Shown here piece after piece: positions 1-39,424 of a stretch of DNA of 40,729 bases (the stretch's first letter is position 1; each line of letters begins with the position of its first letter). The DNA lies in the IMG/VR virus record IMGVR_UViG_3300005859_000002, positions 1 through 40,729 of that record; one strand, given 5' to 3'. Position numbers and translations under genes: made by a program. The notes under the pieces were generated by a model. The model saw nothing but the letters and a program-made list of their open reading frames with translations, was not told the DNA's origin and made no database searches.

Positions 1-99
1 TTAGAAATTTCTTCATTTGTCTAATTTTTTTATTTTTATTTTTTTAAATTAATTTTTTGTAGGGTTATTGGTAATTTTTTTCAGTGATGTTATAATATT
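1..99. repeat. Inner remnant of left inverted terminal repeat
   Basis: Exact reverse complement of 39149-39247; includes the last codons (LEISSFV*) of the 66-aa ITR ORF. Confidence 0.95.
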
Positions 100-149
100 C
101 CTAGTTTGAGGAGAAATTCTAGATGAAGTACTTAATAGTAAAACAGTAG

Positions 150-212
150 AGAGATAGAAAAAGTTATGAAAAATTATTTAGAAGTTGAGAAAAATGAGGA
201 ATAAAAAAAAGA
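150..212. repeat. 63-bp inverted repeat of 38520-38582
   Basis: AGAGATAGAAAAAGTTATGAAAAATTATTTAGAAGTTGAGAAAAATGAGGAATAAAAAAAAGA is the reverse complement of 38520-38582. Confidence 0.9.
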
Positions 213-22348: not shown

Positions 22349-25300
22349 ATGAGCTTCCTTTTAAACTTAGGAGATTTAGGAACATTCTTCAGCGATGAAC
22401 TCTCAGCATTAGAAAATTTTGTAAATTTCTTAAGCTCTGATATTATTAACTTTTTTAATACTGTAGTTGATGACGTTGAAAATACTGTAAGTTTCATTGG
22501 TCAAGCAATTAGTGATATTCCAACTTTCATGCAAAATATTGCTAATAATTTCTTAACTATCTTGCAAAATTTTGTTCAAACAGCATCCTCTGCAATTTCT
22601 GGATTTGTATCATGGTTTTCAAAACAAGTCCAGGGCTTTTTCGGAGATTTAGCAAATTTAGCTTCTGGATTTTTAAATGATGCATATGGATTTTTTACAA
22701 ATGTAGCTAATGCATTTGCATCAATTGTAAGTTCTGTCGTTAGAGATTTAATAAATGGATTTGGGCAAAATATGAAACATATAGCTTCAGCTGTAGGGCA
22801 ACTAACACAATTTTTAACTCCGTTTATTGCACCAATTACAGTTGCTAAATTTCTTCCAGCGATAACTGATAAATTAGCAGATATTCTTCCAGAAGTTGAA
22901 ATTTCTTTATCGCCTATCGGATTAGGTGGAAAAGTCCCAATAAAATTTGGAGAAATAGTAAAAGCATTCGCTGAAACAACTACGGATTTCTTCGATGAAG
23001 TTAGGAACGAAGTCCAATCTACTCTTAAGGAATTTATTAAGGAGCCGTTTGTAAGTGATTTTAAGATATCAGCAAGAGAAATTTTCAATGAAGTTGGACT
23101 TGGAGATTTACCATTTGCAGATCCACCTTTTGCACAAATTGCAAATTGGGTAGGTGCAAGGTCTTATAACGAAATTAAAGATCATCTCAAGGAAACAATA
23201 TATCTAACAGGATATGCCCAATGGTTCACAGATGCATATTTATCTCCTCCAGTTGATGATTTTGTACCTAGAAATCCATTATTTAAACCCGTGAATATAA
23301 AAGATGTAATTTTAGCATCTCAATATGGAATTTTAGATTCTAAAACAGTTTCACAATATGCTGAAAATAATTTGATAACTCCAAAAACTGCTAATTTGAT
23401 GTATAATAACCAAACTGCGAGATTATTACAAAGGGCTGTGGAACAAGGAATTAGACAATTTGTAGTAACTCCTGAAAAAGCATATGAAGAAATTATAAAA
23501 AATGTAAATCTATCTGGAAAAGATTTATTTGAAAAAGTATTTTCACTCGAATATAATTATGCAGTTCAGAGAATAGTGAGACAATTCCTAAGATCACTTT
23601 TATCTAGGGCTTTATCAAATTTTGGAAGACCTTATGTCGATTTAAAGTATTTAGAAACAACAGTTGAAAAATTATTTAAAGAGCTTAATTATCCTAAAGA
23701 AGTTGAAAATGTCTTTAATATTATGATTCAAGAATCTCAACTTGTTTACAGTAATCAATTATTATTAAGACAACTACAAGAAATTACAAAATTAGGAATA
23801 TTCGACGAAAAGAAAATAAAAGGTGAATTGAAAGCTAATAACTTTAATGAAATAGTAGCTTTACAAATTTTAAACTATCAATTAGAGTATGTAAGATTGC
23901 AGTATATCCTTAAAGAGTTTCAATTTAAATTACAAAATTACATTATTAGCTCAAGAGATGCAGAACATCAGTTAAAAACAATAGGATTTGATCCATCGAT
24001 AATTTCTGAAATAATTTTTGAATATCAAACTGCTCCATTAACTAAATATCAAATTTCGCAAATTGAAAGTTTAGCTAAAAAAGGATATATTTCAAGTGAT
24101 GAGATCAAAAAGCAATTACATTCGCTAGGAGTTATAAAAGAATTTGAAGATATTTTTATAAATTATACAAATCAAGAATTTCAATTATCTTCAACTATTT
24201 CGCTTTTAAAAGAACAATTGAAAAACTTCTTGATAGATCCTAAAACTGTTGATGTTGAACTAAAGAAATTGAAAATTAATGAAATCCTAGCTAATCAAAT
24301 AATACAAGAAAATTATGATATAAACATCTCGAAATTACATTTATCATATTTAGAAACTTTAGCTAAAGATTTATACTACGATCAAGCTCAATTATCAGGA
24401 GAATTATCTAAAATATTGAAAGATAAAACTGCAATTGACTTATATTCTCATAAGTTCTATTATGATTATATATTTCCAAAAATTGTAGATTATCATGTTT
24501 CATTAGCTAAACATGGAATAAGTTCAGATATTTCCAAATTGCCGAAAGAAATTGTAGATTACGAAATAAAGCCTGCATTATTAGAATATCAAGTAAATCT
24601 AGAAATTGAATATATTAAGTCATTAATAAAAGATTTACAAATTAAACCAGATATTGCAATTCAAGAACTTAGTAAATTAGGAATACAAAAAGATTTAGCT
24701 AGTTTAATTGTACAAACTTATATTCCTACAATTTACAATATTCATACTATAATTGGAAATATTGTAAATGGACAACTTTACAAGGTTGGAAAAGTTCCCA
24801 TTAATTTAGGAAATGCGGAATCAGAATTAAAAAAATTAGGAATTCCAGATAATCAGATAAAGATATTGTTAGATCAATATGCTTCCAGTTTCGGTTTAGA
24901 AATTTGGAAGAGATATTTACCTTCATTGAATGAAATTGAAAAAGCGTTTAAATATAATTATAAAATTAACAAACTTATAGATTTGTCTTATATCCCTAGC
25001 GAATTCATAAATCTGTATTTAGATGTCTATCAACATGAATTAATTGGAGTTTATGTTCACACGCTGAAAAACGAGTATGTGGAGAGTTTGATTTATGGAA
25101 TTCAAAATCCACAGTTAGAGAATTTAATGAAGCAATATGGAATAAATGAAGTGTTTTTAGGAGTTTTAAAATTATCAGCACAAATTAAGAAAATATTAAC
25201 TGCTTATCAGGAGCTTTATCTAACTCCTTCAAAAGCAATTTCAATAAGTGAATACATTAGTAATCCTAATCAATTACTGCAAAAAGTATTTTCAGAATTC

Positions 25301-25525
25301 CAAGTTCCTAGCGATCTTCAAAATACATATCTTGAATATGCGAGAAATAGAAGAGTAAAAACTTATGTAAATGATATAATTACAACGATCAATTTATTAT
25401 TTGAAAAACATAAAATAGATCAGAACACTGCACAATCATATCTGCAACAACTAAAGAAATATGGATTAACAGATGAAGAAATTCAATTGATATTATTAAA
25501 CTGGCAATTGAGGGCTAACTACTAA
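22349..25525 (+). CDS. Large virion/terminal fibre protein (SIRV2 ORF1070-like)
   Basis: 1058 aa; N-terminal amphipathic repeats and repeated 'LKKLGI'-type helical units; synteny. Confidence 0.9.
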   Translation: MSFLLNLGDLGTFFSDELSALENFVNFLSSDIINFFNTVVDDVENTVSFIGQAISDIPTFMQNIANNFLTILQNFVQTASSAISGFVSWFSKQVQGFFGDLANLASGFLNDAYGFFTNVANAFASIVSSVVRDLINGFGQNMKHIASAVGQLTQFLTPFIAPITVAKFLPAITDKLADILPEVEISLSPIGLGGKVPIKFGEIVKAFAETTTDFFDEVRNEVQSTLKEFIKEPFVSDFKISAREIFNEVGLGDLPFADPPFAQIANWVGARSYNEIKDHLKETIYLTGYAQWFTDAYLSPPVDDFVPRNPLFKPVNIKDVILASQYGILDSKTVSQYAENNLITPKTANLMYNNQTARLLQRAVEQGIRQFVVTPEKAYEEIIKNVNLSGKDLFEKVFSLEYNYAVQRIVRQFLRSLLSRALSNFGRPYVDLKYLETTVEKLFKELNYPKEVENVFNIMIQESQLVYSNQLLLRQLQEITKLGIFDEKKIKGELKANNFNEIVALQILNYQLEYVRLQYILKEFQFKLQNYIISSRDAEHQLKTIGFDPSIISEIIFEYQTAPLTKYQISQIESLAKKGYISSDEIKKQLHSLGVIKEFEDIFINYTNQEFQLSSTISLLKEQLKNFLIDPKTVDVELKKLKINEILANQIIQENYDINISKLHLSYLETLAKDLYYDQAQLSGELSKILKDKTAIDLYSHKFYYDYIFPKIVDYHVSLAKHGISSDISKLPKEIVDYEIKPALLEYQVNLEIEYIKSLIKDLQIKPDIAIQELSKLGIQKDLASLIVQTYIPTIYNIHTIIGNIVNGQLYKVGKVPINLGNAESELKKLGIPDNQIKILLDQYASSFGLEIWKRYLPSLNEIEKAFKYNYKINKLIDLSYIPSEFINLYLDVYQHELIGVYVHTLKNEYVESLIYGIQNPQLENLMKQYGINEVFLGVLKLSAQIKKILTAYQELYLTPSKAISISEYISNPNQLLQKVFSEFQVPSDLQNTYLEYARNRRVKTYVNDIITTINLLFEKHKIDQNTAQSYLQQLKKYGLTDEEIQLILLNWQLRANY

Positions 25526-25556
25526 ATAAATTTGTCATATTTACTAGTTTCTACTC

Positions 25557-26372
25557 ATGAGCGTTAATTTATGTAAATATGAGGCACAGAATATTAGTTA
25601 CATTGATTTAGAAAAATTAGGAGAAAATGCTTATTATGAGATTAAATATGATGGAACTCATATTTGCTTGAAATATGAAGCAGACCTGAAAATTAATACT
25701 AGAAATGACATACCTCACGACAAAGGATATCAAAATTTATTTTATCAGGTTCCAGGAATTGAACAAGTTATAAATTACATAAAAGAAAATGATCAATATA
25801 TTTTACACGGAGAACTTGTTCATAAAAAAACATCTGGAATGCAAATACATGCAAATGAAATACCTCAATTTATCTTATATGATATATTCGATAAAGAAAA
25901 TAACAAATATATAGAGCCGTTAAATTTCGATAATGAAATTTTCTTTTGGCAACCGATAATTTATTTGGAAACTGATTATATTCTGCAAAATATTTTGAAA
26001 GAAAGATTAGAGGGAATTGTTGCTAAAAGCTATAATCAAAATATTGAAATTTGTAAAGAGGGAATAAATTTTAACTTATGTGTTTTTAAATACAAACCTT
26101 TTTATGCGACTCTAGGAGTTATATTCAAGCCAGTTAGGAAAGAAATCGATACTAAAAAATTATCATTTTTATTAGGAGAAATTGATAACGATCTAAAATA
26201 TAATAAAAATAATTGGAAAGAAAATCATCCAGAACTTTATGAATTCTTTATTAAAAATAAAGATAAGATAATAAAAATACTTCAAAATCAAAATATTATA
26301 TCGCAAATAGAGAAAGATACACATCTAGATATTAAAAAAATTAAAGAACATATAGAAAATTTCGCAAGATAA
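25557..26372 (+). CDS. ATP-dependent polynucleotide ligase, probably an RNA ligase
   Basis: Motifs I EIKYDGT, III LHGELV, IIIa FILYDI, IV EGIVAK, V FKYK; helical C-terminus with no evident OB domain. Confidence 0.82.
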   Translation: MSVNLCKYEAQNISYIDLEKLGENAYYEIKYDGTHICLKYEADLKINTRNDIPHDKGYQNLFYQVPGIEQVINYIKENDQYILHGELVHKKTSGMQIHANEIPQFILYDIFDKENNKYIEPLNFDNEIFFWQPIIYLETDYILQNILKERLEGIVAKSYNQNIEICKEGINFNLCVFKYKPFYATLGVIFKPVRKEIDTKKLSFLLGEIDNDLKYNKNNWKENHPELYEFFIKNKDKIIKILQNQNIISQIEKDTHLDIKKIKEHIENFAR

Positions 26373-26398
26373 GTATAATCAAAAATGGCGATTAAAAC

Positions 26399-26722
26399 AT
26401 GAAGATTGTAATAATGGATTTTAAATTAGAGGACTACGTATGTAGCCCCATCCTGGACGGAAGGACAATGGAACCCTTAAATGAAGAACAATTCAAAGAA
26501 TACCTTTCGGCAATGGACACGAATTGGCTCCCAAACGAAAATATAGAAATATATTTTGTAGATGTGGAAGACAAAACTTGGAATAAATTCAAAACAAAAA
26601 ATTCAAAAAGACTCGAATTAACATTAGACCAATTAAACGAATTATTACAAAAATCATCATCCTTATACCTGATAAAGGAAAGTCGTGTAGAAACTTGTAG
26701 ACGTTATTCAAAAAACGATTAG
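26399..26722 (+). CDS. Hypothetical protein
   Basis: 107 aa; GGCGA RBS; follows the ligase gene. Confidence 0.7.
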   Translation: MKIVIMDFKLEDYVCSPILDGRTMEPLNEEQFKEYLSAMDTNWLPNENIEIYFVDVEDKTWNKFKTKNSKRLELTLDQLNELLQKSSSLYLIKESRVETCRRYSKND

Positions 26723-26801
26723 AGAATTAGAACACATGATATACATTATATAATATATGAGAATTGTACATTTATTTTTGTCATCTTACTAATTCTTTCA
26801 T

Positions 26802-28574
26802 ATGAGCTTACCGTATAAAACACGTTTCAAGCTTCCGTTAGAATTCCTAACTTTGCAAGATTGGAATAATTTTGTAAATAACTTACTATTTCTGAATAAA
26901 TATGGATCTGCTAAATTATTAAATTACTATCAAGATGGAAACTTTCAAAATCTAAATGAAGTCTTTTCAAAATATTTAAACGTATCACAATTAATAATAA
27001 ATGGATATGAAGCGTTATATAATCTCAAGGCTGTAGAAGCTTATACGTTTGGTCAAGGAGACATTCAGCCTTTTCAAGACATGTCAAATAGACCAACTGT
27101 AAATTTTCCTTATGAAGTACCTTTTCAATTTATACAATTTTATCCAATGTCTAAATTACCTAATTATAAACTTCCAGCTTTCCAAGTTGAGAAACTAAAA
27201 GTTCAATTAGCTCAAGTTAGTAAACAATTACAACTATTAATCCCGAAATTAACAAGTAAAATTGTAACTCCTACACAAATTGCAGGAACTCAATTTCAAT
27301 TTTCTGGAACTGCAAATTTGGAACAAATAACTTCACAATATTTAGAACCTGCATATTTAGAAACTTGGAGAGAAATTACAATTCAAAATTTAGGCAATTC
27401 TCCAGTTCAAATAAACAATTCTATCTATTTAATGCCTAAAAATTGCTTGAAATTAACTGCAAGTTCACCAAGTGAAATTGAACTAACTGCACAAAATCCA
27501 ACACTTTTATCTGAAGAAATTGAATTTACTGGAACTCCTATTACTACTTATATAATTACAATAACAAATTCTCAAGCTGATCCGACTCCAAGTCAATTTC
27601 AACAATTACTAAATTTGAATTTATCATCATTACTATCAAGCTCTAGCCAATTATTGAATTTACAATTCTGCTTAGATGCACAATGTAATACACCATTATA
27701 TGCTTGGATATCTCAATATAATTCTAATTTATCAACTGTTTATATTTGGATAAAATTACCAACTTCGGTTCCAGCTAATGGATCATTAACTATCTATATG
27801 TTTTTAAGAAATTCAAATCAATATCCTTATACTGGAATAAATGCATATTATAATACAGCTTATGATAACGGAAATTACGTTTTTGACGCTTATATAAACG
27901 CAATGGGTACATCATATTTGCCTAGTAATTTACAAATATCTTCAAACTTATATTCGTCAATTCAATTTACTCCACAAAGTGGTTCAACTCCTGGATATAT
28001 CCTAATGTTAGATAATCAAGGTGGATCATATAATATAATTTATCTAGATTCTACAAATGCTAATAATATAAATGAAATATTTGAAAGTGTAGAATATTAC
28101 AACGGAAGTGCTGATCAACAAGCTATAGAATTCCTCGGAAATACTAGTAGTTTCTGTGCAGGTTCAAACGGAGATTCGGTATTCATGAGTAACGGTTACG
28201 CAGTTTCATGGGACCCATACAACGGTGACGGTTATATTTGGTCTGGTTGTAATCAAGAAGTTTCTTCGTCGGAAAGCGTTTTCACTTCTTCTGGTTATAA
28301 TTTCTATCAAGCAATAGTTACAGAATCCGAAATTGAATATTATGGTCAAACTATCAATTCTCCAATTGTAGATCTACCACAATTAAATTTACAAGAAGTT
28401 ACAATTTGGAATTCTTCAATTACTCCAAACGGTTCAGCTTTCGTAATAATGGATTGCTCAGGCGGTGCAACCCATATTGGATATTTCTATTGGGCTAGAG
28501 CAAGAAAATTACCTCCTAACAACGTTATGCCTTCAAATTCTCAACCGCAAAAAACAATAATTCTAGTATCATAA
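26802..28574 (+). CDS. Minor virion protein (SIRV2 ORF564-like) with DUF2341-like domain
   Basis: ITITNSQ..PTPSQFQQLL, LYAWI, VYIWIKLP, WARAR..PPNNVMPS. Confidence 0.85.
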   Translation: MSLPYKTRFKLPLEFLTLQDWNNFVNNLLFLNKYGSAKLLNYYQDGNFQNLNEVFSKYLNVSQLIINGYEALYNLKAVEAYTFGQGDIQPFQDMSNRPTVNFPYEVPFQFIQFYPMSKLPNYKLPAFQVEKLKVQLAQVSKQLQLLIPKLTSKIVTPTQIAGTQFQFSGTANLEQITSQYLEPAYLETWREITIQNLGNSPVQINNSIYLMPKNCLKLTASSPSEIELTAQNPTLLSEEIEFTGTPITTYIITITNSQADPTPSQFQQLLNLNLSSLLSSSSQLLNLQFCLDAQCNTPLYAWISQYNSNLSTVYIWIKLPTSVPANGSLTIYMFLRNSNQYPYTGINAYYNTAYDNGNYVFDAYINAMGTSYLPSNLQISSNLYSSIQFTPQSGSTPGYILMLDNQGGSYNIIYLDSTNANNINEIFESVEYYNGSADQQAIEFLGNTSSFCAGSNGDSVFMSNGYAVSWDPYNGDGYIWSGCNQEVSSSESVFTSSGYNFYQAIVTESEIEYYGQTINSPIVDLPQLNLQEVTIWNSSITPNGSAFVIMDCSGGATHIGYFYWARARKLPPNNVMPSNSQPQKTIILVS

Positions 28575-28701
28575 TTCATCTAGTAAGATATAATATTTCT
28601 AGCAAAGTTACAAATTAGTACATTTTTTAAGTTGATAATACAAAAATTATGAAAAAAGCTTTAAACTATTTATTTGGAAATAAGCACATAATGAGCTAAA
28701 A

Positions 28702-29670
28702 ATGCCAGATATTATTGAAACACAACCCCAACTCTACTGCAAATCAATTTACCAAATTGCTAATTTATTAGCTCCTCCATCAAAATATTCTGTAATATCT
28801 TCAAAATTATGGAACGAAATTGTACAAGATTTATATCTAACATATAATGTTTTCGAATACATTAATTATTTAACACAATATCAGTATTTAAGAATTATAC
28901 CTTCAATAATTAATATATTTTATAATTCTGACCAATTCTTTAAACCGTACGAATTTACTTCAATTTTATATGCAAAAAAAGGAATATCGCTAACTGTAGA
29001 TGATTTTAATAAACTTATTGACGCAATTATAGAATTAGCTAATAAAAATAATATAAAATTGCAAAAAAGACTTTCTCATGTACAGCATGACCAAATTGTA
29101 AAATCTGAACAATTTTCAGATATAGTTTATGATATTAACCAATTCATAACTTTCAATTATAACCAATACTTTTTATTAGATTGTAATGGATATAAATTTA
29201 GTAACTTATTAAACTCCATAAAAACATTTTTAACTGTTTTGATTAATGAACTTAAAACAAGTATAACAGTTCTTACAAATACATATATTAAAAATTTTTT
29301 AATTAATAATAATAATCAAACAATTAATATATTTGGTTCAATAGATAAATTTTTAATCAATAAAAATTATGAGATAATTACAATAGATGATAATGCTTCT
29401 ATAAATATATTAAAAGTTGGCGTTAATACTTTGATAATTACAATTAATAATAACGCTTATATAAATACATTACATGTTGAAGTAAATTTTGGAAGTATTA
29501 TAATTAATAATAACTCTAACATAAACACATTAAGAATTAACGATAATGCAGATACAATTCAAATTAACGATAATGTAACAATTAAAAACTTTATTTGTGG
29601 TATAAATACTGGAAATGTAATTATTTCACCGAATGCAAAAATTATAAATAATCAATGTACTAAATCATAA
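28702..29670 (+). CDS. Protein with C-terminal beta-solenoid repeats (ORF309-like)
   Basis: About 20-aa Ile/Asn repeats such as INTLHVEVNFGSIIINNNSN. Confidence 0.75.
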   Translation: MPDIIETQPQLYCKSIYQIANLLAPPSKYSVISSKLWNEIVQDLYLTYNVFEYINYLTQYQYLRIIPSIINIFYNSDQFFKPYEFTSILYAKKGISLTVDDFNKLIDAIIELANKNNIKLQKRLSHVQHDQIVKSEQFSDIVYDINQFITFNYNQYFLLDCNGYKFSNLLNSIKTFLTVLINELKTSITVLTNTYIKNFLINNNNQTINIFGSIDKFLINKNYEIITIDDNASINILKVGVNTLIITINNNAYINTLHVEVNFGSIIINNNSNINTLRINDNADTIQINDNVTIKNFICGINTGNVIISPNAKIINNQCTKS

Positions 29671-30141
29671 ATGACAAAAAACAAATTCTCTATTATCTTC
29701 AGATATGAAAGTTAAAATTGTTCCGTAGAGTTTCTTCATCAATTGGAATCTATTTTCAGTCCAGTCATGAATTGCTATACAATATTGTTTATATTTTTGC
29801 AATTGTGAAACATCTAGATTTTTTTCACAGCCCTCACAGTCCATTATAAAAATATCTGTATTTGGATATATATTTCCTGACCATTCTCCATTAATCTCAA
29901 CTTTATCGCAAATATTAAATTCTTTACAAACTTTTTCTTTGAATTTCTTATTAAGTTCATCACTTTTTTCATAACCTATAATTTTTTTAGCACCTTTTAG
30001 CAAAAAGTATAAAGCTGAACTTCCACAGTCATTTCCAATAATTGTAATTGTTTTATCTTTTACTTCTAATTTTCCATAAGCCTGATCGAATTCATGCCAA
30101 TAACAACATTCCATTTTACAGAAATATTCTTTATAATTCAT
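29665..30141 (-). CDS. SAM-dependent methyltransferase (FkbM-like, SIRV ORF158-like)
   Basis: IIGNDCGSSALYF, IIGYE, MDCEGCE. Confidence 0.85.
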   Translation of the reverse strand: MNYKEYFCKMECCYWHEFDQAYGKLEVKDKTITIIGNDCGSSALYFLLKGAKKIIGYEKSDELNKKFKEKVCKEFNICDKVEINGEWSGNIYPNTDIFIMDCEGCEKNLDVSQLQKYKQYCIAIHDWTENRFQLMKKLYGTILTFISEDNREFVFCHL

Positions 30142-30149
30142 AATTTCAC

Positions 30150-31103
30150 CTAACTATTAATAATTTCAAACAATGCATAAACTTGACATTTTCCAGTTGC
30201 CCATGCATAAACATTTTTAGGATTATTAACATGAATTTCTAGCGAATCATTTGGCAAAATTGGAAAATTGTTATAAAGATTATTCCCAATATAGATGATA
30301 TAATTACTTAAATTCTGTAAAATTATTCTAACAGTTTCTAACGTTGAACCTGAATAAAGTGGAGCTGGTGTAGTTGAAACATCAAGCTGTAGACCTTGAA
30401 TTGTCGGCGGAGATAAATACAAACCTAATTTATTAATTGTATTAGCTAAACCTACAGTTGCTAAATATACATATGTAAGTGCATATTCGATAGAACCTGC
30501 AACAAAATAAATAGCATCTTGTATAGAAATTCCTAATCTTTTAGATATAGAATCTATTAATTCATAAAATGAAGTATAGAAATTTTGCAAATCTTCTTTT
30601 ATTATAGTTCTAGACTCTTCAACATTTGAAATTAAGTAATTTACAACATTATAAATTGTTTCGTATAAAGCTTCAGTATCTTTTGAAAGAATCGAGGTAA
30701 CAGTAGGTACTGCTACTATAATTTTCTGATAAATTTCTTCAGGTAATTGAGTAATTGAATAATATAATTGTTCATTTGAATTTATAATATCGTAAATTTG
30801 TTGTTGTGCAGTAGAAATAAATGCAGAGATATAAATTGGATCTTCTTCAGTTAGTACTGGCTGACCTGAAACATATACATCATTAGCAAAATTCCCTTGT
30901 AATGCGAAAATATTATTAGGAATGTATAAATTTCCATTTTTTAGAATTGAAGTAACTGCATTTCCACCAGTTTCATATAATTGAATTAAAAGAAGATTCG
31001 CTGTGTTCCACATTGCAGATGTTAATCTTTGGAAAGGTGAAGCTAATAATTCTGAAATAGATGTATAATTAACGCTCACATCATTTTTATCTAAATACGA
31101 CAT
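30150..31103 (-). CDS. Conserved rudiviral protein (ORF269-like)
   Basis: 317 aa; LLASPFQRLTSAMWN; synteny. Confidence 0.75.
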   Translation of the reverse strand: MSYLDKNDVSVNYTSISELLASPFQRLTSAMWNTANLLLIQLYETGGNAVTSILKNGNLYIPNNIFALQGNFANDVYVSGQPVLTEEDPIYISAFISTAQQQIYDIINSNEQLYYSITQLPEEIYQKIIVAVPTVTSILSKDTEALYETIYNVVNYLISNVEESRTIIKEDLQNFYTSFYELIDSISKRLGISIQDAIYFVAGSIEYALTYVYLATVGLANTINKLGLYLSPPTIQGLQLDVSTTPAPLYSGSTLETVRIILQNLSNYIIYIGNNLYNNFPILPNDSLEIHVNNPKNVYAWATGKCQVYALFEIINS

Positions 31104-38505: not shown

Positions 38506-38728
38506 CCCTGAAGCTATTTTCTTTTTTTTATTCCTCATTTTTCTCAACTTCTAAATAATTTTTCATAACTTTTTCTATCTCTTCATCTTTCTAACGCTTA
38601 GAATCAGCCTTAGAAATTCCTCTATATCTTCAAATTCTATAACATTCCTGATAAAAATAATTGATGAAAATAGAAACAGAAAATAAAAAATAATAAAATA
38701 AAAAGAAAAACTAAAAAAATAAGGAAAA

Positions 38729-39025
38729 TTAACTTTGAGATGACAATAATAAATAAACAGAAAAGAAATCATAAATATTCAAAACAGATTTCTGCTTTAT
38801 CTTAGAAATTTCATCAAAATTACTAATCCTGCTAAATCCGATAAAAGAAGTTATGGACATGCTCTCCCAGTGGAAATGCTCACAGCTATTCCTTAACCCG
38901 TATCTGCCATCGCTGTCAGTAACCAGCAATAGCTGATTATCTAATGGGCAGTAGAAATATCTACTACCATCCATCTCCTCAATTCTTAACTGATCTTTTA
39001 TTTGATTTAATTCTATTGCAACCAT
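38729..39025 (-). CDS. Small early protein with CEHFH motif
   Basis: GAGAAAGATTTATATA promoter at 39060-39075; YFYCPLD...CEHFHW. Confidence 0.75.
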   Translation of the reverse strand: MVAIELNQIKDQLRIEEMDGSRYFYCPLDNQLLLVTDSDGRYGLRNSCEHFHWESMSITSFIGFSRISNFDEISKIKQKSVLNIYDFFSVYLLLSSQS

Positions 39026-39223
39026 TTCTTTTCCCTGATATATCGTCTGTCATAACAGATATATAAATCTTTCTCTATTCTTTTATCTTTCTATTTCACG
39101 CTATTTTTAACGTTTAGAACTAGCCTTAGAATTTTATATTCGAATAGAAATATTATAACATCACTGAAAAAAATTACCAATAACCCTACAAAAAATTAAT
39201 TTAAAAAAATAAAAATAAAAAAA

Positions 39224-39424
39224 TTAGACAAATGAAGAAATTTCTAAATAATAGATTCCGTCAAAATTATAAATTGTGATTTTTGTTCCGCCTATCTTAT
39301 CACTAAAACTGTAATATCCATTTGTCTCAGAACTTTTTTCAAAAAAATTTGAATTTCCCTGAAACTGGTTTAAAAGTTCTTTAAATTGTTTTTCTGAAAT
39401 TTTTATTGCTATATAGTGACTCAT
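39224..39424 (-). CDS. Small early protein inside the ITR
   Basis: GAGAAAGATTTATTAA promoter at 39456-39471, GAGGT RBS. Confidence 0.72.
   Translation of the reverse strand: MSHYIAIKISEKQFKELLNQFQGNSNFFEKSSETNGYYSFSDKIGGTKITIYNFDGIYYLEISSFV

What the first reader, a model, noticed from the sequence alone, without database searches (positions are those of the whole stretch)
25557..26722. Compact OB-less ligase plus unknown partner inserted between two virion genes
Seen: all five nucleotidyltransferase motifs in about 180 aa, then a helical tail. It has its own promoter and is followed by a 107-aa gene. I do not recall a ligase in SIRV1/2. Established: ligases lacking an OB fold are usually RNA ligases, and phage RNA ligases repair tRNA cut by host nucleases. 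Inference: an archaeal viral RNA-repair module against VapC/HEPN/Csx1 nucleases, with the partner as end-healing or targeting factor. No kinase/phosphatase is recognisable. Alternative: motif I (ExKYDG) is DNA-ligase-like, so it could seal hairpin ends after Rep/Hjc cutting. It could also act on the small k-turn RNA.
Basis: partly seen in the sequence, partly recalled or inferred. Interest (0 to 1): 0.75.

Follow-up and report, generated by a model that had tools for sequence, protein, structure and literature searches.

The report
Compact RNA-ligase-like gene in a rudivirus
A rod-shaped virus of hot-spring archaea carries a small, well-conserved enzyme gene of the RNA-ligase type with a tail domain seen nowhere else, while the small gene next to it is an unrelated mobile passenger rather than its partner.

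Summary
ORF 25557-26372 (+, 271 aa) carries all the nucleotidyltransferase motifs within residues 28-181, followed by an all-helical tail with no OB fold. It sits behind its own copy of a recurrent promoter-like element, between two structural genes of a Yellowstone-type rudivirus (Usarudivirus).

The gene is not unique to this window. It occurs as an unstudied "hypothetical protein" in SIRV4-11 and V60 and in many metagenome contigs, always in the same slot. It is under purifying selection (dN/dS about 0.16). It is absent from SIRV3 and from isolate V65.

Profile and fold comparisons place it with RNA ligases (PF09414, Rnl3, Rnl5, Rnl2, Rnl1), not DNA ligases. The tail matches nothing known. 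Its only relatives are a small sister clade of about 320-aa proteins scattered in Sulfolobales chromosomes.

The "partner" idea fails. The 107-aa gene follows only 3 of 22 distinct ligases. 69 of its 73 homologue loci lie elsewhere, most in a gene block of SIFV-like lipothrixviruses. One contig keeps it after a clean deletion of the ligase. Its confident model matches no kinase, phosphatase or other solved fold.

No end-healing enzyme is recognisable in the virus.

Best reading: an accessory stand-alone RNA-type ligase that seals 3'-OH/5'-phosphate breaks. Its biological role is unproven.

The parts
25522..25556 (+). Promoter-like element of the ligase gene: an A/T-rich TATA-like box (AAATAAATT) plus TTGTCAT. 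The TTGTCA starts 25 nt before the ATG, so a leaderless or near-leaderless mRNA is expected.
   Evidence: Conserved in most of 22 ligase loci. The same element lies 24-40 nt before 8 other ORF starts in the window, out of 42 TTGTCA sites in all. Inference only; no transcript data.
25557..26372 (+). Ligase-like gene, 271 aa. It is the homologue of SIRV4 ORF36 (phrog_12949).
   Evidence: All 22 distinct copies are intact at 270-272 aa, with dN/dS about 0.16.
25557..26111 (+). Nucleotidyltransferase (adenylyltransferase) domain, residues 1-185. Motif I is at 25638-25655 (K30 at 25644-25646), motif III at 25806-25820, motif IIIa at 25869-25889, motif IV at 26010-26027 and motif V at 26085-26099.
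   Evidence: PF09414 covers residues 28-180. Invariant columns are listed. hhalign against distant PF09414 proteins gives probability 99.4%, E 5e-21, over residues 20-160. Top Foldseek hits are RNA ligases.
26112..26369 (+). C-terminal all-helical domain, residues 186-271. It is private to this clade.
   Evidence: Helices 182-189, 199-215, 220-223, 225-241, 245-254 and 259-268, with block pLDDT 80-94. No Pfam or PDB sequence match at E up to 10. It aligns only with the tail of the Sulfolobales chromosomal sister clade. dN/dS is 0.157.
26373..26398 (+). 26-nt spacer between the ligase gene and the 107-aa gene. It lacks the TTGTCAT promoter element, so co-transcription with the ligase is likely.
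   Evidence: Sequence. The same spacer sequence occurs in L082 and L051.
26399..26722 (+). 107-aa accessory gene of unknown function. It encodes a small alpha/beta protein and is a mobile passenger, not a dedicated ligase partner.
   Evidence: 36 homologous clusters, alignment A3, AF2 pLDDT 89, no fold match, and no match at significance in Pfam, PHROG, NCBIfam or PADLOC.
25950..26730 (.). Recombination patch relative to the nearest relative, contig L010. The flanks are 100% identical, but the 3' half of the ligase gene is only 75-94% identical and the 107-aa gene is present only in the window.
22349..25525 (+). Upstream flanking structural gene, 1058 aa. Its homologues are annotated as minor capsid or coiled-coil structural protein.
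   Evidence: It lies upstream of the ligase in all ligase loci examined.
26802..28574 (+). Downstream flanking gene, 590 aa, a DUF2341 protein. It has its own TATA-like + TTGTCAT element.

Best explanation
ORF 25557-26372 encodes a stand-alone, catalytically competent ATP-dependent polynucleotide ligase of the RNA-ligase branch.

Structure. It has an N-terminal nucleotidyltransferase domain with all the classic motifs. In place of an OB fold it has an all-helical C-terminal domain of about 85 aa. That domain is shared only with a small clade of about 320-aa proteins scattered in Sulfolobales chromosomes.

Chemistry (inferred). The classic three-step pathway:
1. Lys30 takes AMP from ATP.
2. The AMP is passed to a 5'-phosphate end.
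3. A 3'-OH attacks and seals the break.

Substrate (inferred). The virus encodes no recognisable end-healing enzyme. The natural substrates are therefore most likely ready 3'-OH/5'-phosphate breaks in RNA or in an RNA-containing duplex. Metal-dependent nucleases are expected to leave such ends. HEPN/Csx1 cuts are a less likely substrate.

Genetics (shown). The gene is an accessory, dispensable gene held at one fixed slot between two structural genes of usarudiviruses. It has its own copy of a recurrent viral promoter-like element and is under purifying selection.

The neighbour (shown). The 107-aa gene is an independent mobile accessory gene. It occurs mostly in SIFV-like lipothrixviruses. It was inserted downstream of the ligase in one rudiviral sub-lineage and is probably co-transcribed with it in this window. 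It does not depend on the ligase.
For: Motifs and domain:
- The motifs are invariant in 37 homologues.
- PF09414 is matched above its cut-off over the whole domain.
- All 22 distinct copies are intact, with dN/dS about 0.16 in both domains.
- The tail is helical at high confidence, with no strands.

RNA-type rather than DNA-type:
- Foldseek best hits are RNA ligases Rnl1, Rnl3, Rnl5 and Rnl2 (E 3e-6 to 1e-4). DNA ligases score weaker.
- A profile search of 1.84 billion proteins finds, beyond the family itself, a 67-aa fragment, two members of the Sulfolobales clade, and PF09414 proteins of about 195-330 aa.
- hhalign to those PF09414 proteins gives probability 99.4%.
- Their profile hits Rnl3 and Rnl5 at about 1e-13 and no DNA ligase at E <= 1e-3.
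- A joint profile also hits T4 Rnl2 at 5e-10, and DNA ligase 1 only at 2e-4 over motifs I-III.
- PMC7261155 states that all DNA ligases carry an OB domain, whereas RNA ligases join the NTase domain to diverse other domains.

Sister clade: hhalign gives probability 98.2% over 230 columns, including the tail.

Fixed slot and dispensability.

Promoter element.

Independence of the 107-aa gene.
Against: - No biochemical evidence exists for adenylylation or for any substrate.
- The full-length model is only moderate (pLDDT 74; residues 92-99 and 130-180 are poor). Foldseek TM-scores are low (0.33-0.42).
- The protein also passes the Pfam cut-off for DNA_ligase_A_M (29.4 against 26.2 bits), although only over motifs I-III.
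- The link to solved RNA ligases is transitive, through distant metagenomic proteins. The family's own profile hits no PDB chain.
- Some enzymes called RNA ligases also join DNA, so a DNA substrate is not excluded.
- The genomic contexts of the cellular homologues give no functional clue.
- The fold of the C domain on its own was not compared with the C domains of Rnl1-Rnl6.
Confidence: 0.6

Rival explanations
1. The ligase and the 107-aa protein form a dedicated two-gene RNA-repair module against VapC, HEPN or Csx1 nucleases, and the 107-aa protein acts as the end-healing or targeting subunit.
For: - The two genes are adjacent in three distinct ligase lineages: the window, L038-L040/L081, and L082.
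- The spacer is short and promoter-less, which suggests co-transcription.
- In other viruses some 107-aa homologues lie just downstream of a DSPc-type phosphatase, an enzyme class that includes some enzymes acting on RNA ends.
Against: - 19 of 22 distinct ligases lack the 107-aa gene as neighbour.
- 69 of 73 homologue loci have no ligase nearby.
- Three viral contigs of 35-46 kb carry the 107-aa gene but did not appear in the ligase scan.
- L051 deleted the ligase and kept the 107-aa gene on the ligase promoter.
- No kinase or phosphatase signature or fold is found.
Confidence: 0.07
2. A DNA-sealing enzyme of the viral replication cycle. It would close nicks or hairpin ends after Rep or Hjc cutting, or seal nicks in the A-form DNA being packaged.
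For: - Motifs I-III match DNA_ligase_A_M above its cut-off, and NCBIfam DNA-ligase models match weakly.
- The virus encodes Rep-like and Hjc proteins that make DNA ends.
- Some RNA-type ligases can join DNA ends (my knowledge).
Against: - There is no OB domain, which all DNA ligases have (PMC7261155).
- Motif I lacks the arginine usual in DNA ligases.
- Relatives and fold hits are RNA ligases.
- SIRV3 and isolate V65 have an empty slot, and no other rudivirus in the collection gives a tblastn hit, yet they share the same genome type.
Confidence: 0.13
3. An RNA-processing rather than an RNA-repair enzyme. It would circularise or join particular viral or host RNAs, as archaeal Rnl3 enzymes circularise single-stranded RNA.
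For: - The best TM-scores, and the best profile hits through distant relatives, are to Rnl3 enzymes.
- MthRnl circularises single-stranded RNA (abstract of PMC4797309).
Against: - It lacks the N-terminal and dimerisation domains of Rnl3, since the catalytic lysine is already at residue 30 of 271.
- No structured RNA family or tRNA is detected in the window.
Confidence: 0.15
4. A morphogenetic helper, with or without ligase activity. The parallel is T4 RNA ligase 1 (gp63), which also promotes tail-fibre attachment. This protein would help to mount the terminal fibre proteins encoded on either side.
For: - The gene always sits between the two large structural genes and carries the same promoter-like element as the downstream one.
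- The top Foldseek hit is T4 Rnl1, and several viral hits are named 'RNA ligase and tail fiber attachment catalyst'.
Against: - Rudiviruses without the gene build the same virions.
- The catalytic residues are strictly conserved, which argues for enzymatic use.
- The protein does not match the Rnl1 Pfam family.
Confidence: 0.05

Closest known systems
T4 RNA ligase 2 and the Pfam RNA_ligase family (PF09414; Rnl2 type)
   Same: - N-terminal nucleotidyltransferase domain followed by an all-helical C-terminal domain of about 90 aa.
- PF09414 is matched above its cut-off over the whole catalytic domain.
- A joint profile with distant relatives aligns to T4 Rnl2 residues 6-304 (E 5e-10).
   Different: - The tail has no detectable sequence similarity to the Rnl2 C domain or to any PDB chain.
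- Motif I is KYDG rather than the KxHG of T4 Rnl2 (my knowledge).
- It is 271 aa, against 335 for the T4 Rnl2 chain.
- The family's own profile does not reach Rnl2.
Archaeal Rnl3 RNA ligases (Pyrococcus abyssi Pab1020, MthRnl, Palaeococcus pacificus)
   Same: - Archaeal and thermophilic, with a related NTase domain.
- Highest Foldseek TM-scores (0.41-0.42).
- Best PDB hits of the bridging profiles (E about 1e-13).
   Different: - It has no N-terminal domain and no dimerisation domain. The catalytic lysine is at residue 30, and the protein is 271 aa against about 380.
Rnl5 nick-sealing RNA ligases (Naegleria gruberi NgrRnl, Deinococcus DraRnl)
   Same: NTase domain similarity through the bridging profile (E about 5e-13) and in Foldseek.
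   Different: Rnl5 has an N-terminal OB module before the NTase domain (PMC7261155). Here the NTase domain comes first, and no OB fold is present.
T4 RNA ligase 1 with polynucleotide kinase-phosphatase (the phage tRNA repair pathway)
   Same: - It is a virus-encoded RNA-type ligase.
- The best Foldseek E-value is to T4 Rnl1 (2.8e-6).
   Different: - No match to the Rnl1 Pfam family.
- No kinase-phosphatase is recognisable in the virus.
- TM-score is only 0.34.
Minimal ATP-dependent DNA ligases (for example Chlorella virus DNA ligase, LigD ligase domain)
   Same: Motifs I-III match DNA_ligase_A_M (E 8e-7) and, weakly, NCBIfam DNA-ligase models.
   Different: - No OB domain and no motif VI.
- The match stops at residue 90.
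- DNA ligases rank below RNA ligases in every comparison.
Uncharacterised ~320-aa proteins of Sulfolobales chromosomes (Stygiolobus caldivivus, Sulfurisphaera ohwakuensis, Metallosphaera javensis, a Thermoprotei MAG)
   Same: - Same two-domain build, tail included. hhalign gives probability 98.2%, E 4.5e-14, over 230 columns.
- The same catalytic motifs are present.
   Different: - About 27% identity.
- An extra N-terminal extension of about 45 aa.
- Cellular, sporadic, and in variable regions.
- Mostly invisible to Pfam: 1 of 6 members matches.

Membership tests
Covalent nucleotidyltransferase superfamily (ATP-dependent polynucleotide ligases) | Motif I KxDG with the nucleophilic lysine | tested here: met
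   EIKYDG, with K30, G33 invariant and D32 nearly invariant in 37 sequences. K30, D32 and G33 are also invariant in the alignment with distant relatives.
Covalent nucleotidyltransferase superfamily (ATP-dependent polynucleotide ligases) | Motifs Ia, III, IIIa, IV and V in the usual order and spacing | tested here: met
   R49, E86, D109, E152-G153-K157 and K178/K180 are invariant or nearly so. The Pfam match covers model positions 6-171 of 171.
Covalent nucleotidyltransferase superfamily (ATP-dependent polynucleotide ligases) | Formation of a covalent enzyme-AMP adduct and strand joining | not testable with these tools
   Needs purified protein.
ATP-dependent DNA ligases | OB-fold domain (with motif VI) fused C-terminally to the NTase domain | tested here: not met
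   The tail 182-268 is all helical at pLDDT 80-94. No OB or DNA_ligase_A_C Pfam match. The rule is stated in PMC7261155.
ATP-dependent DNA ligases | Full-length match to the DNA-ligase adenylation domain model | tested here: inconclusive
   PF01068 scores 29.4 bits (cut-off 26.2) but covers only residues 18-90, model positions 14-83 of 204.
Rnl2 family (T4 RNA ligase 2) | PF09414-type NTase domain | tested here: met
   E 6.9e-8, 33.3 bits against a cut-off of 27. PF09414 is precomputed for 36 of 37 homologue clusters.
Rnl2 family (T4 RNA ligase 2) | Rnl2-type C-terminal domain | tested here: inconclusive
   By sequence there is no match: the tail profile A7 hits no PDB chain, T4 Rnl2 included, at E up to 10, and there is no Pfam hit.
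Rnl3 family (Pab1020 / MthRnl) | N-terminal domain before the NTase domain, plus dimerisation and C-terminal domains (about 380 aa) | tested here: not met
   The lysine is at residue 30 and the total length is 271 aa. In Rnl3 chains the NTase match starts at about residue 75-85.
Rnl5 family (NgrRnl / DraRnl) | N-terminal OB module followed by the NTase domain | tested here: not met
   There is no room before motif I, and the model has no OB fold.
Rnl1 family (T4 RNA ligase 1) | Match to the Rnl1 model (PF09511) | tested here: not met
   No PF09511 hit at E up to 1. The Foldseek similarity has TM 0.34 only.
Phage-type RNA repair system (ligase plus end-healing enzyme) | A polynucleotide kinase and/or phosphatase encoded with the ligase | tested here: not met
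   No such Pfam family among 34 window ORFs scanned. The 107-aa neighbour has no family or fold match.
Proposed two-gene module (ligase + 107-aa protein) | Conserved co-occurrence of the two genes | tested here: not met
   3 of 22 distinct ligases have the neighbour. 4 of 73 homologue loci lie in the rudiviral slot, one of them without the ligase.

The most novel reading that the evidence does not exclude
The usarudiviral protein and its Sulfolobales sister clade form a further, so far undescribed family of ATP-dependent RNA ligases: an NTase domain plus a private helical C domain. This would be the first RNA ligase of a crenarchaeal virus, working at about 80 C. The virus would use it to reseal RNAs nicked by the host's abundant metal-dependent toxins (VapC/PIN type), with no need for end healing.
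Probability: 0.25. Interest if true: 0.65.

Novelty: new variant of a known kind. Interest (0 to 1): 0.48.

Why it matters
- In the paper library searched, no article links rudiviruses with an RNA ligase.
- A 2023 review states that only Rnl1-type ligases of moderately thermophilic phages have been characterised among thermophilic viruses (PMC10423840).
- A 271-aa ligase from a virus of an acid hot-spring host, with a C domain unlike any known one, would add a new build to the RNA-ligase families and could be a useful thermostable reagent.
- Biologically, it is a variable accessory gene parked among structural genes, with cellular cousins in Sulfolobales. It therefore gives a concrete handle on RNA-level conflicts, or RNA processing, in archaeal virus infection.
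- The case also shows that adjacency in one genome is a poor guide to partnership. The insertion slot carries four states: empty, ligase, ligase plus passenger, and passenger alone.

Tried and rejected
Searches that found nothing useful:
- Single-sequence and family-profile searches of PDB sequences with the ligase found nothing relevant. A bridge through distant relatives was needed.
- The sigma-70 promoter and terminator scan is not applicable to archaea and gave chance-level hits.
- For the 107-aa protein: no tblastn match in the phage collection. Pfam SduA_N (E 0.027) and PADLOC Csx21 (E 0.023) are dismissed as chance. The best Foldseek hits to DHFR-like folds have E 0.01 and TM 0.31, so they are dismissed.
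- The PADLOC hit of the ligase tail (E 0.005, 14 bits) is dismissed.
- No paralogues of the 107-aa gene exist among the other 107-aa ORFs of the window.
- Rfam and tRNA scans of the window were empty.
- The supplements of the anti-defence gene paper do not list the ligase.
- Source names for the distant PF09414 relatives were not available.
- The contig of the nearest distant relative, P0076, was too short to give context.

A conclusion I corrected:
- I first concluded that the 107-aa gene was unique to this window's ligase locus. Searches corrected this: two further ligase lineages carry it, and one contig carries it without the ligase.

Tests that were inconclusive:
- The tree of 107-aa homologues is too short to settle one origin against several.
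Full report
**What the window is.** The window is IMG/VR contig UViG_3300005859_000002. It is a 26.5% G+C genome of a rod-shaped virus. Its closest isolates are the Yellowstone Sulfolobus islandicus rod-shaped viruses SIRV4-11, genus Usarudivirus, at about 74-77% nucleotide identity around the finding. Pfam scans of its larger ORFs give the usual rudiviral set: ThyX, a Cas4-like nuclease, an ATPase, a Rep-like protein, dUTPase, the major coat protein, glycosyltransferases and Hjc. No kinase or phosphatase appears.

**The observation.** The two ORFs are exactly as described: 25557-26372 (271 aa) and 26399-26722 (107 aa), both on the + strand.
- The 271-aa protein matches Pfam RNA_ligase (PF09414) over residues 28-180. 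This is above the curated cut-off and covers nearly the whole model. It matches DNA_ligase_A_M only over residues 18-90.
- 36 homologous clusters of 62-91% identity, nearly all of 270-272 aa, were found among 5.8 billion proteins.
- In their alignment the ligase motifs are invariant or nearly so: EIKYDG (K30), T48-R49, HGELV (E86), FILYDIF (D109), EGIVAK (E152, G153, K157) and FKYKP (K178, K180).
- All 22 distinct copies recovered with their DNA are intact. The median dN/dS is about 0.16 in the catalytic part and in the tail alike.
- The AlphaFold2 model is moderate overall (pLDDT 74). It is confident for residues 181-270, which are purely helical, so there is no OB fold.

**The promoter claim.** This cannot be proved without transcripts, but it has sequence support.
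- A TATA-like box followed by TTGTCAT lies 25 nt before the ATG. It is conserved in most ligase loci.
- The same element lies 24-40 nt before eight other ORF starts of the window, including the next structural gene.
- That makes nine of the 42 TTGTCA sites in the window, far more than chance placement would give. By my estimate about 0.4-0.5 would be expected.

**Where the gene occurs.**
- In the phage and archaeal-virus collection, tblastn finds it only in 17 Usarudivirus records, which represent nine isolates: SIRV4-11 and V60. Where those records are annotated, it is called 'hypothetical protein'.
- One source (UniRef) already names it 'RNA ligase domain-containing protein'.
- SIRV3 and isolate V65 have the two flanking genes directly adjacent.
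- In every ligase locus the gene lies right after the ~1058-aa structural gene. In 16 of 22 distinct cases the DUF2341 gene follows directly.
- It is therefore a dispensable accessory gene with a fixed address.

**What kind of ligase it is.**
- The family's own profile finds no solved structure by sequence.
- A profile search of 1.84 billion representative proteins finds only 19 proteins at E <= 0.001. These are the family itself, a 67-aa fragment, two members of the Sulfolobales clade described below, and PF09414 proteins of about 195-330 aa.
- Profile-profile comparison with a set of these PF09414 proteins gives probability 99.4%, E 5e-21, over residues 20-160, that is motifs I-IV.
- Their profile hits Rnl3 ligases (Palaeococcus, Pab1020) and the Rnl5 ligase of Naegleria at about 1e-13. 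It hits no DNA ligase at E <= 0.001.
- A joint profile also reaches T4 Rnl2 (5e-10). It reaches human DNA ligase 1 only at 2e-4, over motifs I-III.
- Foldseek with the model puts RNA ligases first, both in the PDB (T4 Rnl1, Rnl3, Rnl5, Rnl2; E 3e-6 to 1e-4) and among viral models. DNA ligases rank behind. TM-scores are low, 0.33-0.42.
- The literature states that all DNA ligases have an OB domain after the NTase domain. RNA ligase families Rnl1-Rnl6 instead carry unrelated flanking domains (PMC7261155).
- Together these results place the protein on the RNA-ligase side. Its length and the position of the lysine exclude the Rnl3 and Rnl5 builds. It does not match the Rnl1 model.

**The tail and the sister clade.**
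- The last ~90 residues match no Pfam family and no PDB sequence, even at E 10.
- The only relatives of the tail are in a small clade found through the best distant hit (P0076). These are ~320-aa proteins in the chromosomes of Stygiolobus caldivivus and Sulfurisphaera ohwakuensis, in a few metagenome contigs, and, by a genome scan, in Metallosphaera javensis and a Thermoprotei MAG.
- hhalign between the viral and the cellular clade gives probability 98.2% over 230 columns, running through motif V into the tail.
- The cellular genes are sporadic and stand alone in variable regions with transposases, a HEPN-MNT pair and sugar-nucleotide genes. No conserved neighbour hints at function.
- The protein is thus a member of a Sulfolobales-restricted, undescribed ligase clade. 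By sequence its C domain defines a new variant.

**The 107-aa neighbour.**
- It is a real gene. There are 36 homologous clusters of 51-68% identity, clear conserved positions and a confident small alpha/beta model (pLDDT 89).
- It has no family match of any weight and no solved-structure match (best E 0.01, TM 0.31).
- It is not a ligase partner in any regular sense. Of 73 metagenome loci with a homologue, 69 have no ligase or rudiviral structural gene nearby.
- Most of those 69 lie in a conserved gene block whose marker protein is the SIFV gp67/68 homologue of betalipothrixviruses. In the long contigs this block is a few kilobases from one end.
- Of 22 distinct ligases, three are followed by it: the window, the L038-40/L081 lineage, and L082.
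- The window, L082 and L051 share the same junction sequences on both sides of the gene. The L038-40/L081 lineage has a different, shorter upstream junction.
- In L051 the ligase itself has been cleanly deleted. The ligase promoter and the first 11 codons are fused to the spacer, and the small gene is kept.
- The closest relative of the window (contig L010) is 100% identical on both sides. It differs in a ~0.8-kb patch that starts inside the ligase gene, and it lacks the small gene.
- In a short tree, the four rudiviral copies fall in one subclade but are interleaved with copies from other contexts.
- The slot therefore exists in four states: empty, ligase, ligase plus passenger, and passenger alone. 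The two genes are gained and lost independently.

**How it most likely works.**
- Shown: an intact, selected NTase active site; no OB fold; RNA-ligase kinship; a fixed slot; dispensability.
- Inferred: the enzyme follows the classic ligase pathway through Lys30-AMP and seals 3'-OH/5'-phosphate breaks, most probably with an RNA 3'-OH strand.
- The virus shows no recognisable end-healing enzyme. Cuts by metal-independent HEPN/Csx1-type RNases leave 2',3'-cyclic phosphate and 5'-OH (established knowledge). They would not be direct substrates.
- Ends left by metal-dependent nucleases such as PIN-domain toxins would be direct substrates. This last point is what the chemistry of such enzymes predicts; it has not been tested here.
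- Whether the role is counter-defence repair, RNA processing, DNA sealing or help in assembly is open. I rank them in that order of likelihood.

**Comparison and novelty.**
- It works like an RNA ligase and belongs to the PF09414 branch by its catalytic domain.
- It fails the defining domain builds of DNA ligases, Rnl1, Rnl3 and Rnl5.
- Its tail shows no sequence link to Rnl2.
- The gene has sat unnoticed in nine published genomes, so its existence is not new. Its assignment, its sister clade and its private C domain are new, as far as the searchable literature shows.
- I rate it a new variant of a known kind and of moderate interest.

Noticed in passing
window 25950-26730, compared with L010 (ENA contig k141_28832): The window and L010 are 100% identical over 23300-25950 and 26730-30300. 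In between, the 3' half of the ligase gene is only 75-94% identical, and the 107-aa gene is missing from L010. This is a recent ~0.8-kb recombination patch with one breakpoint inside the ligase gene.
   Followed up: yes
L051:200-300 (Ga0080003_1021536, same sample as the window): The ligase promoter and the first 11 ligase codons (MSVNLCHYEAQ) are fused to the ligase/107-aa spacer. The ligase has been cleanly deleted, and the 107-aa gene now sits behind the ligase promoter.
   Followed up: yes
window 988, 1396, 12310(-), 13258, 15244, 25532, 26778, 31187, 40069(-): A TATA-like box followed by TTGTCAT recurs 24-40 nt upstream of nine ORF starts. This looks like a shared viral promoter or initiator element.
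   Followed up: partly
window 26741-26765; clearer in L001, L016, L019, L021 and others, about 40-60 nt before the DUF2341 gene start: A near-perfect palindrome (ATACATAATATTATGTAT) is conserved upstream of the promoter of the DUF2341 structural gene in most usarudivirus loci. It may be a regulator binding site. It is degenerate in the window.
   Followed up: no
L005:4368-5152; also L006-L009, L048, L049, L053: In one group of SIFV-like contigs the 107-aa homologue lies directly downstream of a 130-140-aa DSPc-type phosphatase (PF00782). It is upstream of a 156-159-aa gene whose homologue is window ORF 29665-30141(-).
   Followed up: partly
L120, L122, L124, L125 (Sulfolobales chromosomes): Three of the four cellular ligase-like homologues lie within a few kb of sugar-nucleotide or glycosylation genes (RmlD, epimerases, NTP_transferase). 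One is also next to a HEPN-MNT pair. The copy in the Thermoprotei MAG (L125) is split into two ORFs and may be broken.
   Followed up: partly
window 25557-26372 (protein residues C6, C37, C166, C175; H35, H54, H84, H89, H98): Four cysteines and several histidines are invariant across the viral ligase family. C166 and C175 lie in a family-specific insert between motifs IV and V that the model predicts poorly. They may form disulfides or a metal site.
   Followed up: no
window 1-212 versus 38520-39247: Terminal-type inverted repeats are present, but the right-hand copies lie about 1.5 kb inside the right end of the contig. The contig end may therefore be misassembled, or may carry extra sequence beyond the repeat.
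   Followed up: no
window 22349-25525 (protein residues 23-264): The N-terminal part of the 1058-aa structural protein matches several phage tape-measure protein families in PHROGs (best E 1.6e-9).
   Followed up: no
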